From assembly GCA_965235115.1 (NCBI GenBank), contig OZ249440.1:18972001-19036000 (forward strand): a stretch of DNA of 64,000 bases. Reading direction: 5' to 3'. The notes below the pieces were generated by a model. That model worked only from the letters and a program-made list of their open reading frames with translations, was not told the DNA's origin and made no database searches. A program made the translations under genes and the position numbers. Below are positions 7,779 through 60,325 of this stretch, in pieces; position 1 is the stretch's first letter; each line of letters begins with the position of its first letter. The DNA is from Laetmonice hystrix (taxonomy: Eukaryota).

Positions 7779-7785
7779 TATATAG
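7779..7785 (+). promoter_or_regulatory. Candidate TATA box of the secreted-protein gene
   Basis: TATATAG about 60 bp upstream of ATG 7842. Confidence 0.5.
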
Positions 7786-7841
7786 GCCTACACCGAGGTA
7801 TCTTCCTGGCCGACAAGACAACCAGACGATATTGACAAGTC

Positions 7842-10051
7842 ATGGGGTGAGTATATACGCTTGCAATAACTCCGTATGTTCTCTATGAGAACATCTCAAT
7901 GACGCAGTAAGGTGAGGACTGTTTGAATTCGCCATGCCTCGGCAACTGCTGGGGGTGGGGTGGGGTGGGGTGGGGTGGGGTGGGGTGGGGTGGGGGCGTT
8001 GGCTGGGAGCTTGGAGATGGGGGACATTTAGTGGTTAGAGGGATTGGATATAGTTCTCCACCAGCAAAACCACGTGAGAAAGTGAAAGAATACATCTCAT
8101 CTCATGTTGATTGTAATGTTTCCACCGACTGTCCAATGAAAGAGAACTATGCAACGTTTCCTCTCTTATGGAAACTGGTCAACTTTGGGTCAAACTGCCA
8201 TACGGACAGTCGCCCGTGTCAGGACAATGCCAATAATTATATTCTTATTTTCACAGGGGTTTGTTCATCATCCTCGGCTTCCTCTGCTTCCAGTCGACCT
8301 CAGGTCAGACTGTGACTGAACTTAAAGCTCAAGTTGAAGAACTGAGCCGACAGGTCATGATGCAGCAGACGTACAGAGAGGAGGAGACTCGGACTGGAGG
8401 TCACTCTGGAGTAAAACAGAAACGTGTGTGGGAGGACGGAACACGGCCGTACCACTCGTCGTCCCACGTGGGCCGTAACGTGGCCGCCATCCACGACCAC
8501 GCTAACAACGTGCGCACCGTCGGCATGGGAGAATTCGCCGCCGTCCTCAACGGGGTCGAGTTTAGGACCCGTCACAACGACTTCCGCCTCAGCATGCCCA
8601 GTCACAACAGCACCGAGTATCACAGCACTGAAGAAATCCCGTTTCCGGAGGTACCGAAGGCAGTCACAGATAAACCAACAACTGCGGAACAAATCAAGGA
8701 AATGCGAGAGTGGTTCCGGGCATGGCAGAAACAGGATTTCTCGGTGCGTGACTACAGGGAGTATTTCAAGCCAGTGCTTTGCTACCTGGAAGGTGCCTGG
8801 ACGACAGCCGCTGCAAATGGAAAGATTGACGAGCCTTTCGTCAGCGACCGTCACCTGTTAGACGCATTCTCTTGGAATGAACTAGAACAGAAAATCCGGT
8901 TTACCTCCTACACAGGCACAAAGGATCGTTTCGAAAACTATGCGTATCTTCCAAGGACCATCATTGACATCAAGGACGGCAAACCCGTCTTTGCTCAATG
9001 GAACTACCGCATTATGTGCCACCCGCTCAAAAATGACCTTCCGCTGAACCGCTTCAGAGTCGTTGACGACCTGACGTCACGTCTCGCCTTCAAAAACACG
9101 ATGGCCAAGCACGCGGAGACGCGCGCTGCCCGCTTCCAGCTGAATCCGTACAACAAAGCCACCTGGGTCGAGGGTCACAGCGTGCGGGGCTTTCTGGATG
9201 ACCTCATGGGAGAAGTGCCGGGCAAGAATAACTACCAAGCAAACCTAAATGATGAGATGTTCAATATCACTGCACTTCAGTTCAACAAAACGACTCCGTT
9301 AAACGCTGGCTTCTACCACAGAAACTACAAGGTGGATCAGCGCGGGGCAATGGGGTCGAAACTCAGGAGGCGAAGTTTTTCTGACGATACCGTCTTCATG
9401 GCCAAAACAAGTCAAACAAAAGTGGCTCCATCTAGACTAGAAACCTGTAATTACAAACTTGGCAAACTGGAATGTAAATCGGAGTTTGAGCGTTGGAGCT
9501 ACGCTGTACCTCTTGAGATCATATACCTGACACCTCTACCAAACTGGAATCCGTATAATATTCAATACAAGGGCGATGAAAACACGTCACTAGGCCGCAC
9601 CGTCTATGACAACGGTCGGACCGGCGACGACGACCCCAACAAAGCCTATAACGGTACGAACAGTAAGTACTTCTACCAAACACCAGCCGAATTCTTCATT
9701 GGAGACATCGCCCAAGTGGACGCTGCAGACACCGACAAAGGAGTCTATCTCTACGTCAAGGATAGGCAAGGAAAGGTCAGGAAGGTCGTGGCTTCTGGCC
9801 ACAGAGTCTTCCTGCCTCCCGTCATCGAAGCGGAAAAGCCCATCCGCCAGAGGTATCCCATCATGCCCATTCATGGCGAGGGAAGTGGCTCTTGGAAGGA
9901 GTTGGAGGCACTAAAGGACATCGTCCTAGAACCGGCTAAATATAAACACATGTACCGGCAACCTATCTCCACTGGTGGGTCGGCTTCACCAGAGACAGGC
10001 GGAGAGACTTCCGGCGAGGAGAACTACGTTTATGATGACACCGCGTACTAA
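7842..10051 (+). CDS. Uncharacterised secreted protein, ~599 aa, two coding exons (7842-7846 joined to 8257-10051)
   Basis: ATG GG|gtgagt ... ttttcacag|G GGT TTG gives MGGLFIILGFLCFQSTSG (signal peptide), a short predicted coiled coil (TVTELKAQVEELSRQ), then a stop-free globular region with IHDH, RTRHNDF, YLEGAW and RWSYAVPLEIIYLTPL motifs, 4 mature Cys and several N-x-S/T sites. The 1795-bp exon has coding-like base composition. Confidence 0.88.
7955..7995. repeat. (GGGGT)n microsatellite in intron
   Basis: Direct reading of sequence. Confidence 0.9.
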
Positions 10052-10356
10052 TAAACTATCAAATCCTAACGGTAACCCGGCTAAGAAACGTCTGCGGACT
10101 ATACAACACTACGCAGACAAAACGCCGATTCGATACGACAGGAAGGTTGCGGAAACGAAAGCACTTTTCGATAGCCCTTCACTTCTTGCTCTAAAAATTA
10201 CGACTACTACTGCTGAATATAATGCCCTAAATGTATACATTCATTTAAAAGCGCTTATAATATTTTATCTCCATGTATTGCTGTTTTTACCTTTTCATTT
10301 CTAAATTTAAATACATGTATATATTAACAAATCACTATCTGTATGCTATCTTCATT

Positions 10357-10373
10357 AATAAAGACGAAATAAA
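10357..10373 (+). terminator. Tandem AATAAA polyadenylation signals of the secreted-protein gene
   Basis: AATAAA at 10357-10362 and 10368-10373, about 300 bp after the stop. Confidence 0.65.
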
Positions 10374-12565
10374 GCAAAGAAAATCCCAACGCATCATTGC
10401 GGTGTCCATCAAGATTTAATTTCTTCAATTCAGATTGTTATTTCAAGACAAAAGCGTGTCCATTGATAGTTGTTTACTTGAGGTGAGCGACTCGAGAAGT
10501 AGACAAAATAATACGGACGGCTACACCTGGCAGGTAACTCAGGAACACCTGAGTACTTGAGGTCTGTCCAGGTATGCCAAGGGAACAGAATCTTGCCTGA
10601 TTTCGTTCAAGCTTTCAGATAATTCCGTTATTTACACATACCCATACATGGAGAAATCTCCAAGTTTCTACATACAAAAATACTGCGTATATACTGATAT
10701 CTCCTAAAACGAAACTGCATAGTTTTATTGCTCTATCAAAACAATTCCTCTTTTTTTTCTTCTTCTTTTTTTTCGCTCAGCAAACCAATACATCTGCATA
10801 CATTTATTGCTCTATCAGTTAAACTTTACATGCAACAATAATAAATTATTGCTTATAGTTCAACCATCTTGCTCGTTTGCTCATTATCCAAAATAAATAT
10901 GATCTATCCCTTCTGACTTATTCCGTTCGGTTCTAGATTTGTAGATTTTCATGCCTAATAAAGTTCCAGCTCAAACCCGTCCGGAACATATTGCCATTAT
11001 CCTATATACTAGTAGTATGCAGTGATGTCTATATTAAAGCTACGCCCTGACATATACCTTTGGTGCTCCATGACTTAGACCGAGCTCACGGCTCACTGCC
11101 GACTAGTTCATCATAGTACGGTCATCTCTTGACGACACAGACCTGACTTGCCTGGCTCAAGAAACAGCCAAGTTATAAGAAGTCACAAAACGCTAGACAA
11201 GTAACAAGAACCTAGAGCGAGGTACTTAGACTGACCTCACATTACGATTTACAGATTGATGCTGGAATCTAAATCTACTGTATTTATCGGTATCTATATC
11301 TACTAGACAAGTCTGCAGGTGGTATATTTCATTATCTGATCTTAGATCGGCTCAAGCGTTTTATACGCTGCATGCCGAAGGTTTAGAGTATCCTGAGAAT
11401 AAAGTCTGACAAAAGTGCACTTGCACAATAATATTAAAGATGGTTGTTAAAGGTACCGATACGCCCTAATTTATATATGATTAGACAAAAAAGATCACAT
11501 TCAGTTTCATGCAGGTAAAAGAGAATGTGGGCGGGGAAGTACATCACAGCAATTTCAGAACCTGCGAGTAGACAAGCGAGCAGCCGCCAGTCAGTTATAC
11601 TTACCCGGCCTAGATCGGCCGAGGGTTGCAGTTTATTTCTTCCCAAAAACGGGCTCTATAAAGTTCCATTTTATCAATAGCTTTACATTTCTAAGTCAAT
11701 GCAGTTGTAAAACCTTCTTTCCGCCAGGCTTCGTGTCCTGTCTCCACCTCATAGAAACACCTCTTTCACGTACGATATATAAATTTCTTTCTTCATTTCA
11801 ATATCGTTTTGTTTATGAAATACGGCTTACATTGTGACCCAGTACGTAACAGTCATGCATACATTAAACACTGTCACAAAAGATTGCGTTCAGATTAACT
11901 TTTACTTAGACATACAACACAACCTCGATATTATACTCACCTATACTCACAATCGCATAATTCTGCTTATAACAGGCTCTGCTGTAATGCTGTGTCCAAT
12001 TTGTTGTTTTCTCTTTCATCTGATTTGTCAACAAAATATTAAATCACAAATGTATATAGAAACATACAGACATTACATGAGGAGAGTATCTTGTTTAAAT
12101 ATATTTTGGGTTCATAATATCAGAAATTCATTCAATTCTCGAAACAAAACTGAAAATCACTCGTTAGTGCTAATTTAATAAGTACAGGTCCTGTTAATTT
12201 AGACGTTTCAATTTCTATTTAATCACTCAGTTACTAAGCTACTTGTCAATATCCTGAGAACCCGAGTTTATCACACCAATATCCAGAGAATACTAAATAC
12301 GTCTCAGAGAGTTATCCCTTCGGTTTCCTTATTGCTTCCTTAAGTCCACGTCGGCTTCCGGTCAGGGATATGATCATGATTCAAGATCTTGCCAAGTTTA
12401 TCTTTATGTTGGCCAGTGAATATGTTCCAGCACTACCAGACTGCTTGTTTACATTTTGTCCAGTTCTTCCCCTGATGATATTTGATTTATCCAGACCGTC
12501 GGACGTCGCCGCCTTTTGTCCTGACTACCGTAGCCGATCCGTGAGTCCACCCCTAGGGTCCATCT

Positions 12566-60325
<47,760 letters not shown>

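What the first reader, a model, noticed from the sequence alone, without database searches (positions are those of the whole stretch)
7779..10373. Compact gene for a ~599-aa secreted protein of no family I can name
Seen: a complete unit of TATA, a 5-nt first coding exon (ATG GG|gtgagt), one 410-nt intron, a 1795-nt uninterrupted exon and a double AATAAA. The ORF track misses the true start. The product has a signal peptide, a short coiled coil and a ~500-aa region with clustered His/Asp/Glu motifs (YHSSSH, IHDH, RTRHNDF, SHNSTEYH, SDRH, MCHP, IHGEG) and 4 Cys. Neighbouring genes average ~140-nt exons, so the architecture is anomalous. Inference: a secreted metal-binding enzyme or oligomeric matrix protein that arose by retroposition or ancient horizontal transfer. 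From memory, similar motif strings occur in uncharacterised marine-invertebrate proteins; I could not verify this.
Basis: partly seen in the sequence, partly recalled or inferred. Interest (0 to 1): 0.72.

Follow-up and report, generated by a model that had tools for sequence, protein, structure and literature searches.

The report
Phage tail-fibre domain in an animal
This compact two-exon gene encodes a secreted protein whose 500-residue body is clearly related to the outer part of bacteriophage tail fibres, so it belongs to a widespread but unnamed marine-eukaryote family that most likely began as a gene captured from a phage.

Summary
A 5-nt first coding exon (7842-7846), a 410-nt intron and a 1795-nt exon (8257-10051) give a 599-aa protein with a signal peptide and a short N-terminal helix. 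No RNA run exists, so the splice junction rests on sequence and comparison with a paralogue.

The protein has no Pfam, PDB or Swiss-Prot match. It belongs to a large unnamed family that is 50-58% identical across cnidarians, annelids, brachiopods and molluscs, with a likely radiolarian member.

The new result is that residues ~36-557 are homologous to the distal part of P2-like prophage tail fibres:
- Pseudomonas, Dechloromonas and Pseudoalteromonas prophages, 28-34% identity.
- Bacillus phage G gp431, TM 0.74.

In the two prophage loci annotated, the gene lies between the baseplate genes and the tail sheath or a fibre-assembly chaperone. Four histidines (HxH, RTRH, SxRH) are invariant in all prokaryote rows sampled and kept in 82-93% of eukaryote rows.

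An ancient phage-eukaryote transfer is therefore supported, but its direction is inferred rather than proven. This copy has also lost all internal introns and the family's C-terminal His/Cys module. A metal site is plausible. Enzymatic activity is untested. The function is inferred to be a secreted oligomeric binding protein.

The parts
7779..7786 (+). TATA-like element about 60 nt upstream of the ATG
   Evidence: TATATA found at 7779. No transcript data are available.
7842..7846 (+). First coding exon, ATGGG (Met plus 2 nt of codon 2), ending in phase 2
   Evidence: The donor is GG|GTGAGT. Exon 2 has no in-frame ATG ahead of the signal peptide. The C1 paralogue has the same phase-2 acceptor position. 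Annotated relatives have first coding exons of 6-9 nt.
7847..8256 (+). The only intron (410 nt); it contains a (GGGGT)8.8 microsatellite at 7952-7995
   Evidence: GT...AG borders with a pyrimidine tract. Tandem repeat found. The DNA contigs run through it unspliced, so those runs are DNA.
8257..10051 (+). Second exon: 1795 nt of uninterrupted coding sequence including the stop codon
   Evidence: Open frame. Aligns at 50-58% identity to 638 family members. Polymorphisms are 8 synonymous to 7 non-synonymous.
8257..8305 (+). Rest of the signal peptide (residues 2-18 of 599; cleavage predicted after STSG)
   Evidence: Read by eye: a hydrophobic core LFIILGFLCF followed by small residues at -3 and -1. 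No signal-peptide predictor was available.
8306..8398 (+). N-terminal helix or short coiled coil (residues ~19-49)
   Evidence: The AF2 model gives a helix at residues 2-47 with pLDDT above 90 from residue 20. The last ~15 residues also align to the phage fibres.
8363..9928 (+). Phage-tail-fibre-like domain (residues 36-557 of the 597-aa translation)
   Evidence: tblastn to Bacillus phage G gp431, E 3e-32. Foldseek E 5.8e-38, TM 0.74. 15 IMG/VR loci and 7 bacterial loci at 28-34% identity. Domain model pLDDT 94.2.
8492..8500 (+). HxH motif (H79, D80, H81)
   Evidence: His in 100% of 53 prokaryote-side rows and 90-93% of 40 eukaryote-side rows.
8564..8581 (+). RTRHND motif (residues 103-108; H106 and D108 universally conserved)
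8843..8854 (+). SDRH motif (residues 196-199; H199 universally conserved)
10052..10373 (+). 3' UTR with AATAAA at 10357 and 10368 (another overlaps the stop codon at 10050)
   Evidence: No remnant of the family's C-terminal module was found here or anywhere else in the window.

Best explanation
This is an intact chromosomal gene for a secreted 599-aa protein made of a signal peptide, a short N-terminal helix and a ~520-residue globular body.

Shown:
- The body is homologous to the distal, post-collar part of tail fibres of P2-like myophages and prophages, and to gp431 of Bacillus phage G.
- The gene belongs to a large, strongly conserved, unnamed family of marine eukaryotes.

Inferred:
- The family arose by one ancient transfer between phages and eukaryotes, most likely from phage to eukaryote. 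It then gained a signal peptide, disulfide cysteines and a C-terminal His/Cys module.
- In the lineage of this genome, one paralogue lost all internal introns while keeping the tiny 5' exon and its intron. That is the pattern expected from recombination with a partial cDNA. It then duplicated into the C1 and C5 copies.
- The window copy (C5) later lost the C-terminal module.
- Mechanism, by analogy with tail fibres: the helix oligomerises the chains, probably into trimers, and the body binds an extracellular ligand. That ligand is most plausibly a microbial surface glycan.
- Four invariant histidines may hold a metal ion that stabilises the fold or takes part in binding.
For: Gene model and integrity
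- Searches support the model.
- Polymorphisms are 8 synonymous to 7 non-synonymous, and the non-synonymous ones fall in variable stretches.

Eukaryotic family
- 638 word-index hits and 1122 clusters at 50% identity, named from Cnidaria, Annelida, Brachiopoda and Mollusca.
- One cluster holds an acantharian transcript.

Phage homology
- Foldseek to gp431: E 5.8e-38, TM 0.74, rmsd 3.2 over 584 columns.
- tblastn against 2.3 Gb of phage records: E 3e-32.
- 15 viral contigs match at 31-34% identity over residues 36-542.
- Bacterial matches come from Pseudomonas, Dechloromonas and Pseudoalteromonas.
- 75 prokaryote-side clusters were found. The few that carry a source name (6 of 75) are called 'phage tail protein' or 'tail-collar fiber domain-containing', and 30 carry PF12571.

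Phage genomic context
- Baseplate J, then the fibre (PF12571 N-terminus plus this domain), then sheath and tape measure.
- Baseplate_J, Tail_P2_I, fibre, then tail-fibre assembly chaperone.

Shared residues and fold
- 43 positions are at least 85% conserved on both sides, including H79, H81, H106 and H199.
- For the domain-only model, only 23 of 48,161 PDB chains reach Z >= 2. The top 12 are all phage receptor-binding-protein shoulder domains, TssK, or tail-fibre and baseplate proteins, with Z 3.8-6.2.

Phylogeny
- Eukaryote and prokaryote rows are split by one strongly supported branch. The window copy and the C1 copy are sisters.

Introns
- A phase-0 intron at residue ~213 is shared by Owenia, Littorina and this genome's multi-exon paralogues.
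- Intron 507 (phase 1) is shared by Nematostella and Lingula.
- Both are absent from the window gene.

C-terminal module
- It is present in the C1 copy and in deep eukaryotic branches but absent here, with no remnant.
Against: - No RNA evidence for expression or for the splice junction.
- The direction of transfer cannot be read from a tree in which each group sits on one side of a single branch. Tail fibres are also known to capture metazoan domains (PMC12923769).
- Oligomerisation was not shown. The one complex job gave no answer.
- No ligand, metal or activity has been measured for any member, phage or eukaryote.
- In the prophages, further small ORFs follow the fibre gene. The domain may therefore be a fibre body that carries a separate adhesin, not the receptor-binding tip itself.
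- The very high conservation across animal phyla (about 55%) is unusual for an immune lectin.
- A fully intronless Lingula gene leaves open that the intron-poor state is primitive.
Confidence: 0.72

Rival explanations
1. The transfer went the other way. The domain is an old eukaryotic secreted protein that phage tail fibres captured as a distal module, as extracellular contractile injection system fibres did with C1q and adenovirus-shaft domains.
For: - The tree shows only a clean split, so a root inside the eukaryotes is not excluded.
- Metazoan-to-fibre transfers are documented (PMC12923769).
- The eukaryotic side was sampled more richly: 1122 clusters at 50% identity in the all-protein scan, most of the listed ones eukaryote-like, against 75 clusters at 90% identity in the word-limited search started from the Pseudomonas fibre, a few of which are themselves eukaryotic. 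The two counts are not directly comparable.
Against: - The prokaryote side has many deep lineages, spanning beta- and gamma-proteobacterial prophages, an alphaproteobacterial plasmid and a Gram-positive jumbo phage.
- The only PDB folds resembling the core are native phage-tail, T6SS and contractile-injection-system baseplate proteins.
- The named eukaryotic hits come only from four invertebrate phyla plus one radiolarian, so the known distribution is patchy and marine; absence from other groups was not tested.
- Cysteines, the signal peptide and the C-terminal module look like eukaryotic additions.
Confidence: 0.17
2. The body is a metal-dependent enzyme, for example a glycan- or cell-wall-degrading activity of the kind carried by many phage fibres and spikes, and not a passive binding module. 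The four invariant histidines and the conserved Asp, Glu and Arg residues would form the active site.
For: - H79, H81, H106, H199, D108, E178, R251, D376, E420, D491, R530 and R532 are conserved across phage and eukaryote sequences.
- Conservation across animal phyla is unusually high, about 55%.
- Most eukaryotic members carry an extra His/Cys-rich C-terminal module.
Against: - No match to any enzyme family by Pfam, NCBIfam, PHROGs, PDB sequence, or the PDB, Swiss-Prot and Atlas fold searches.
- In known fibres, conserved HxH motifs are structural metal sites on the trimer axis (general knowledge of T4 gp37 and R-pyocin fibres, not tested here).
- The 3D clustering of the residues could not be examined.
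Confidence: 0.3
3. The window copy is a decaying, truncated retrocopy with no function. It lost the C-terminal module and may not be expressed.
For: - It lacks the C-terminal module present in its sister and in most relatives.
- No RNA data exist.
- It has no internal introns.
Against: - The 599-codon frame is intact.
- Every residue that is invariant in the 19-sequence alignment is kept.
- Its branch length (0.63) is similar to its sister's (0.51).
- Polymorphism is enriched for synonymous changes.
- Splice sites, the TATA element and poly(A) signals are preserved.
- Other members, and all phage homologues, also lack the module.
Confidence: 0.08

Closest known systems
Tail fibres of P2-like prophages or tailocins of Pseudomonas, Dechloromonas and Pseudoalteromonas (annotated 'phage tail protein' or 'phage tail-collar fiber domain-containing protein', with a PF12571 N-terminus)
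   Same: The ~500-residue distal region aligns end to end at 28-34% identity. The shared motifs are HxH, NGxxxRTRHNDY, EMRExF, SxRH, YRI, YAIPLE, TPLxxWNPY, ADT and RYPxxP.
   Different: - The phage proteins have a baseplate-attachment N-terminus (PF12571) and a C-terminal coiled coil.
- They have no signal peptide and none of the four cysteines.
- They lack two insertions: the Cys loop at 397-406 and the GRxGG loop.
- In the two loci annotated, they sit between the baseplate genes and the tail sheath or a fibre-assembly chaperone.
- The domain itself is not described in Pfam, PHROGs or NCBIfam.
Bacillus phage G gp431 (1013 aa, uncharacterised)
   Same: Best structural match: Foldseek E 5.8e-38, TM 0.74, 24% identity over 584 columns. 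tblastn gives 26% identity over residues 14-556.
   Different: It comes from a jumbo myovirus of a Gram-positive host. The domain is the C-terminal half of a longer protein, and no function is annotated.
Uncharacterised eukaryotic family (e.g. Nematostella LOC116616310, Lingula LOC106153767, Orbicella LOC110062447, Ridgeia NP493_1609g00081)
   Same: Signal peptide, N-terminal helix and the whole domain at 50-58% identity. The four cysteines are conserved. Several annotated genes also have a tiny first coding exon.
   Different: Most members are about 700 aa and end in a ~100-residue module (HxH ... GHxH ... CDG..C.D.H). In Nematostella, Lingula and Owenia this module begins at a phase-0 intron; in the first two it is a single last exon. 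The window protein lacks it. Most members are also multi-exon.
Receptor-binding-protein 'shoulder' domains and TssK (lactococcal phage 1358 and p2 RBPs, Bordetella phage Mtd, T6SS TssK, Haloferax tailed virus 1 fibre)
   Same: These are the only solved folds that resemble the core of the domain. The top 12 of just 23 hits with Z >= 2 all belong to this group, with Z 3.8-6.2 and 99-159 aligned residues.
   Different: Z stays below 8, only about a quarter of the domain aligns and identity is 6-13%. This is a resemblance of the core, not demonstrated membership.

Membership tests
Phage tail-fibre distal domain (unnamed; P2-like fibres and phage G gp431) | Significant sequence similarity over the whole ~500-residue domain | tested here: met
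   E 3e-32 against the phage database. 22 viral or bacterial loci at 28-34% identity over residues ~29-571. Alignment A3.
Phage tail-fibre distal domain (unnamed; P2-like fibres and phage G gp431) | Same predicted fold | tested here: met
   Foldseek TM 0.74, rmsd 3.2 and probability 1.00 to the BFVD model of gp431. Both structures are predictions.
Phage tail-fibre distal domain (unnamed; P2-like fibres and phage G gp431) | Conserved core residues (HxH, RTRH.D, SxRH, YRI, PLE, WNP, ADT, RxRxP) | tested here: met
   All are present in the window protein. 43 positions are at least 85% conserved on both sides.
Functional phage tail fibre (virion or tailocin component) | Baseplate-attachment N-terminus (PF12571) and a location in a tail gene module | tested here: not met
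   The window protein has no Pfam hit. The gene is a spliced eukaryotic gene lying tail-to-tail with a ferlin gene. So it is a homologue of the domain, not a tail fibre.
Eukaryotic LOC116616310-like family | Signal peptide, helix and domain with four conserved Cys | tested here: met
Eukaryotic LOC116616310-like family | C-terminal His/Cys module (HxH ... GHxH ... CDG..C.D.H) | tested here: not met
   Absent from the protein, and no remnant in the 3' UTR or the rest of the window. A few other members also lack it, e.g. Gigantopelta P0080.
Metalloenzyme or metal-binding protein | Conserved metal-ligand residues | tested here: inconclusive
Four His are invariant in all 53 prokaryote rows and kept in 82-93% of the 40 eukaryote rows.
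Metalloenzyme or metal-binding protein | Ligands clustered in 3D, or a match to a known metal-site fold | not testable with these tools
   Model coordinates are not exposed. No enzyme or metal-site fold was found.
Processed retrogene | Lacks the introns of its parent or paralogues | tested here: met
   No intron within residues 3-599. Paralogues are split at about 215, 295, 340, 392 and 439, and the intron at ~213 (phase 0) is shared with Owenia and Littorina.
Processed retrogene | No introns at all, plus a poly(A) remnant and target-site duplications | tested here: not met
   A 410-nt intron is kept after nt 5 of the CDS, at the same site and phase as in the C1 sister. No poly(A) tract is evident after 10373. 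Target-site duplications were not searched for, and the event is old (the two copies are 57-58% identical).
RBP shoulder / TssK fold | Structural similarity with Z clearly above background over a whole domain | tested here: inconclusive
   Z 3.8-6.2 with 99-159 residues aligned. The hits are thematically uniform but below the tool's trust level of Z 8.

The most novel reading that the evidence does not exclude
A bacteriophage tail-fibre module was captured by marine eukaryotes before cnidarians and bilaterians split. It has been kept under strong constraint ever since as a secreted, coiled-coil-oligomerised protein that recognises bacterial surfaces, or acts on them. In effect this would be a domesticated phage receptor-binding device serving host-microbe interaction, with a conserved four-histidine metal site inherited from the phage.
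Probability: 0.3. Interest if true: 0.85.

Novelty: new variant of a known kind. Interest (0 to 1): 0.72.

Why it matters
Transfers from bacteria and phages to animals are known for enzymes and toxins, such as lysozymes and aerolysins. In six full-text searches I found no description of a phage tail-fibre body domain fixed and conserved across several animal phyla.

The link gives a first functional handle on a family of more than a thousand clusters that currently carries no annotation. It also gives a first eukaryotic relative for a phage fibre domain that is unannotated in Pfam, PHROGs and NCBIfam.

If the domain binds bacterial surface structures, the family would be a new class of invertebrate microbe-recognition protein. 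It would also be a ready-made set of natural variants for studying how this fibre domain recognises its target.

The gene structures are informative too. They show tiny 5-9-nt first coding exons, intron positions shared between cnidarians and bilaterians, and repeated intron loss. Together these make a clean case study of how a transferred gene becomes 'eukaryotised'.

Tried and rejected
- Pfam, NCBIfam, PHROGs and PDB-sequence searches of the window protein found nothing.
- Foldseek against the PDB found nothing below E 0.18.
- AlphaFold DB Swiss-Prot and the ESM Atlas shape search gave only noise. The ESM Atlas feature search gave no usable hit.
- The first PDB-wide alignment with the whole model was swamped by single-helix matches to the N-terminal helix. 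I repeated it with a domain-only model.
- The transcript test of the 7846/8257 junction was not possible. The three runs that hold the stretch are DNA from one sample, and no RNA run exists.
- The homo-oligomer test (two copies of residues 52-551) gave no answer. The chains did not fold without an alignment (pLDDT 24), so this is evidence neither way. A trimer of the whole domain exceeds the size limit.
- The search for a remnant of the C-terminal module downstream of the stop codon or elsewhere in the window found none.
- Six literature searches for a prior description of the family or of tail-fibre genes in animals found none. The only relevant paper concerns the opposite direction of transfer, in contractile injection system fibres.
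- Earlier notes of this scan held nothing on this family.
- Ideas considered from the motifs and dropped, because no fold or profile match backs them and the spacing does not fit: M23 peptidase (HxxxD and HxH), cupin (HxH..E..H) and alpha-carbonic-anhydrase-like (HxH plus a His 25 residues on).
- Assembly contamination was rejected. The gene has a spliceosomal intron, sits on a chromosome-scale contig next to a ferlin gene, and has seven or more paralogous loci, most of them with introns.
Full report
**1. The observation**

- TATATA lies at 7779.
- ATGGG at 7842-7846 is followed by GTGAGT.
- A 410-nt intron ends in a pyrimidine tract and CAG at 8256.
- An uninterrupted 1795-nt exon runs to the stop codon at 10049-10051.
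- AATAAA occurs at 10357 and 10368, with a third copy overlapping the stop.

The spliced CDS is 1800 nt and encodes 599 aa. The protein begins MGGLFIILGFLCFQSTSG|Q, which reads as a signal peptide by eye. The mechanical ORF list starts at a TTG at 8261 and so misses the Met. The mature chain has four Cys.

The splice junction could not be tested. The only public runs that hold this stretch are three DNA runs from one sample. Their contigs run through the intron at an even depth of about 55x.

Indirect support for the junction is good.
- The sister paralogue on contig C1 also lacks an in-frame ATG.
- It has a strong acceptor at the same point of the signal peptide, in the same phase 2, with a candidate 11-14-nt ATG exon about 1.45 kb upstream.
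- The annotated genes of Hydractinia, Owenia and Lingula start with coding exons of only 9, 6 and 6 nt.

The contigs differ from the window at fifteen coding sites, eight of them synonymous. The seven replacements fall in variable stretches. This fits a gene under constraint.

**2. The family**

The protein has no match in Pfam, NCBIfam, PHROGs or PDB sequences. It nevertheless belongs to a big family.
- There are 638 hits in the word-indexed search and 1122 clusters at 50% identity in the exhaustive scan.
- Named members are all 'uncharacterized protein'. They come from corals, anemones, octocorals and hydrozoans; from annelids (Owenia, Ridgeia, Lamellibrachia, Paralvinella); from Lingula; and from gastropods and bivalves.
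- They are 48-58% identical to the window protein over almost its whole length.
- One deep-branching cluster includes a transcript from the acantharian Phyllostaurus.
- Longer members carry typical extracellular add-ons. These include a sub-threshold C-type lectin domain, a ShK domain, mucin-like repeats and cysteine-rich repeats that look sushi- or PAN-like by eye.

Most members are about 700 aa. They end in a ~100-residue module with HxH, GHxH and CDG..C.D.H motifs. The window protein lacks this module, and the window holds no remnant of it. The module is present in deep eukaryotic branches and in the C1 sister. Its absence here is therefore a secondary loss.

**3. The link to phages**

An AlphaFold2 model built on 61 family members is confident (pLDDT 91.9, pTM 0.90). 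It shows a 47-residue N-terminal helix followed by a large alpha/beta body. Foldseek found nothing in the PDB.

In the viral model library, however, it matched Bacillus phage G gp431 with E 5.8e-38, TM 0.74 and rmsd 3.2 A over 584 columns. Sequence searches confirm the match independently.
- tblastn against 50,697 phage records finds gp431 at E 3e-32, 26% identity, over residues 14-556.
- A pattern scan of IMG/VR returns 15 viral contigs at 31-34% identity over residues 36-542.
- A scan of bacterial genomes returns Pseudomonas, Dechloromonas and four Pseudoalteromonas species.
- A search started from the Pseudomonas protein finds 75 clusters ranging from 94% down to 30% identity. Six carry a source name, either 'phage tail protein' or 'phage tail-collar fiber domain-containing protein', and 30 carry PF12571.

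The genomic context on the phage side is unambiguous.
- In viral contig L013 and in Pseudomonas sp. QTF5, the gene follows baseplate J and the P2 gpI-like protein. It precedes two small ORFs, the tail sheath and the tape-measure protein.
- Its first ~165 residues are the universal P2-type fibre N-terminus. The remaining ~510 residues are the domain found in the animal protein.
- In Pseudoalteromonas citrea the domain ends a 1136-aa protein. That protein lies between Baseplate_J, Tail_P2_I and a tail-collar ORF on one side and a tail-fibre assembly chaperone on the other.

The alignment shows long shared motifs:

| Animal protein | Phage fibre |
|---|---|
| AIHDHANN | INLHNHPN |
| LNGVEFRTRHNDY | INGxxVRTRHNDY |
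| EMREWF | EMREYF |
| SDRH | SFRH |
| WNYRI | WRYRI |
| YAIPLEIIYLTPLxxWNPY | YAIPLELILRTPLEGWNPY |
| ADT | ADT |
| RYPIMP | RYPVYP |

Over 93 sequences, 43 positions are at least 85% conserved on both sides.

A second model of the domain alone (pLDDT 94.2) was aligned to 48,161 PDB chains. Only 23 reached Z >= 2. The top twelve are all phage-tail or related baseplate proteins, with Z 3.8-6.2:
- the shoulder domains of the lactococcal phage 1358 and p2 receptor-binding proteins;
- Bordetella phage Mtd and SPP1 gp22;
- T6SS TssK;
- the fibres of Haloferax tailed virus 1 and cyanophage A-1(L);
- the phi812 and Anabaena contractile-injection-system baseplates.

Each score is weak by itself. The uniform theme suggests that the core of the domain is a fold native to phage tails.

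**4. Direction and age of the transfer**

In trees of 57 and 93 rows, all eukaryotic sequences sit on one side of a single strongly supported branch and all prokaryotic ones on the other. That fits one transfer event but cannot give its direction.

I favour phage to eukaryote, at about 70%, for four reasons.
- The phage side holds many deep lineages. Their hosts range from beta- and gamma-proteobacteria and an alphaproteobacterial plasmid to a Gram-positive jumbo phage.
- The fold's only solved look-alikes are tail proteins.
- The named eukaryotic members come only from four invertebrate phyla plus one radiolarian, so the known distribution is patchy and marine. I did not test for absence elsewhere.
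- The cysteines, signal peptide and C-terminal module look like later additions.

The opposite direction is a real possibility. Fibres of contractile injection systems have captured metazoan C1q and adenovirus-shaft domains (PMC12923769).

The residence in animals is old. A phase-1 intron at window residue 507 is shared by Nematostella and Lingula. In Nematostella, Lingula and Owenia, the C-terminal module begins at a phase-0 intron.

**5. History of this copy**

The genome holds at least seven further loci. The multi-exon paralogues lie on contigs C19, C13 and C29. They are split at about residues 215, 295, 340, 392 and 439. The first of these introns is phase 0, at the same place as in Owenia and Littorina.

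The window gene and the C1 gene are sisters, 57-58% identical, with support of 96. Both consist of a tiny ATG exon, one intron and one giant exon. Losing every internal intron while keeping the 5'-most one is the pattern expected from recombination with an incomplete cDNA. It is not what simple retroposition leaves.

A primitive intron-poor state is not excluded. One Lingula gene is completely intronless, and intron positions turn over quickly in this family. After the duplication, the window copy lost the C-terminal module.

**6. How it probably works**

Shown: a signal peptide, an N-terminal helix, a confidently folded body homologous to a fibre domain, four eukaryote-specific cysteines, and four His conserved on both sides. 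H79, H81, H106 and H199 are invariant in all 53 prokaryote rows and kept in 82-93% of the eukaryote rows.

Inferred:
- The helix oligomerises the protein. Tail fibres are trimers, which is general knowledge and was not tested here.
- The body binds an extracellular ligand, most plausibly a microbial surface glycan, since host recognition is the job of distal fibre parts.
- The histidines may hold a metal. HxH motifs form structural metal sites in T4 and R-pyocin fibres (recalled from memory, not tested).

Three cautions apply.
- In the prophages, further small ORFs follow the fibre gene, so the domain might carry a separate adhesin and not be the binding tip itself.
- The very high conservation across phyla would also suit an enzyme.
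- The one oligomer prediction gave no answer.

**7. Verdict**

Retroposition is supported in a modified form. Metal binding stays plausible for four of the histidines. 'Enzyme' is unsupported.

I found no description of this family or of its link to phages in the literature. I rate it a new variant of a known kind, namely phage-to-eukaryote gene transfer, here of a tail-fibre body domain. Interest is fairly high.

Noticed in passing
window 7952-7995: A perfect (GGGGT)8.8 microsatellite lies on the coding strand inside the gene's only intron. It is G-quadruplex-prone, and the short-read contigs break there.
   Followed up: partly
L002 (G000:C1:18285467-18290143), gene on the minus strand: Sister paralogue (57-58% identical) with the same layout. 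One giant exon gives a 696-aa open frame with no in-frame ATG and a phase-2 acceptor inside the signal peptide. Unlike the window gene, it still carries the C-terminal His/Cys module.
   Followed up: partly
G000:C19:23.80-23.84 Mb (L004, L005, L007, L009, L011), C19:14.355 Mb (L003, L010, L012), C13:21.985 Mb (L006, L008), C29:13.60 Mb: Multi-exon paralogues of the same family, including a tandem cluster of at least three copies on C19. Some fragments contain stop codons and may be pseudogenes.
   Followed up: partly
L036 (Nematostella), L037, L041 and L042 (Lingula), L038 (Hydractinia), L039 (Owenia), L040 (Littorina): Gene structures differ widely, from 1 to 13 exons. First coding exons of 6-9 nt recur. 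One Lingula gene (P0075) is fully intronless. A few intron positions are shared across phyla, given as window residue and phase: 57/0, 91/1, 138/0, 213/0 and 507/1.
   Followed up: yes
C-terminal ~100 residues of most eukaryotic members (e.g. P0004:600-706): A eukaryote-specific module with HxH, GHxH and CDG..C.D.H motifs. It starts at a phase-0 intron in Nematostella, Lingula and Owenia. It has no Pfam match and is absent from the phage homologues, which end in a coiled coil instead.
   Followed up: partly
L030:7644-8471 and L035:7888-8841: The ORFs just downstream of the fibre gene in Pseudomonas (275 aa) and Pseudoalteromonas (317 aa) share a weak N-terminal match to the Leptospira LIC10774/LIC10365 surface-protein family and to a PHROG tail protein. 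They could be a separate fibre tip or adhesin.
   Followed up: no
P0173 (1430 aa, residues 1032-1103): One long family member carries a plastocyanin/azurin-type copper-binding domain (PF00127, E 3e-8) downstream of the fibre-like domain. This could be a fused gene model or a real metal-related accretion.
   Followed up: no
window 8414-10247 compared with run X3: A second haplotype or individual differs at 16 of 1834 bases (about 0.9%), which points to a highly polymorphic species.
   Followed up: partly
window 10373-12566: According to an earlier first-stage note, the ferlin gene's last exons lie at 12566-14657 and its 5' parts near 50 kb. That would put the ferlin on the minus strand, so the two genes are tail-to-tail about 2.2 kb apart and the fibre-like gene is not nested in an intron.
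   Followed up: no
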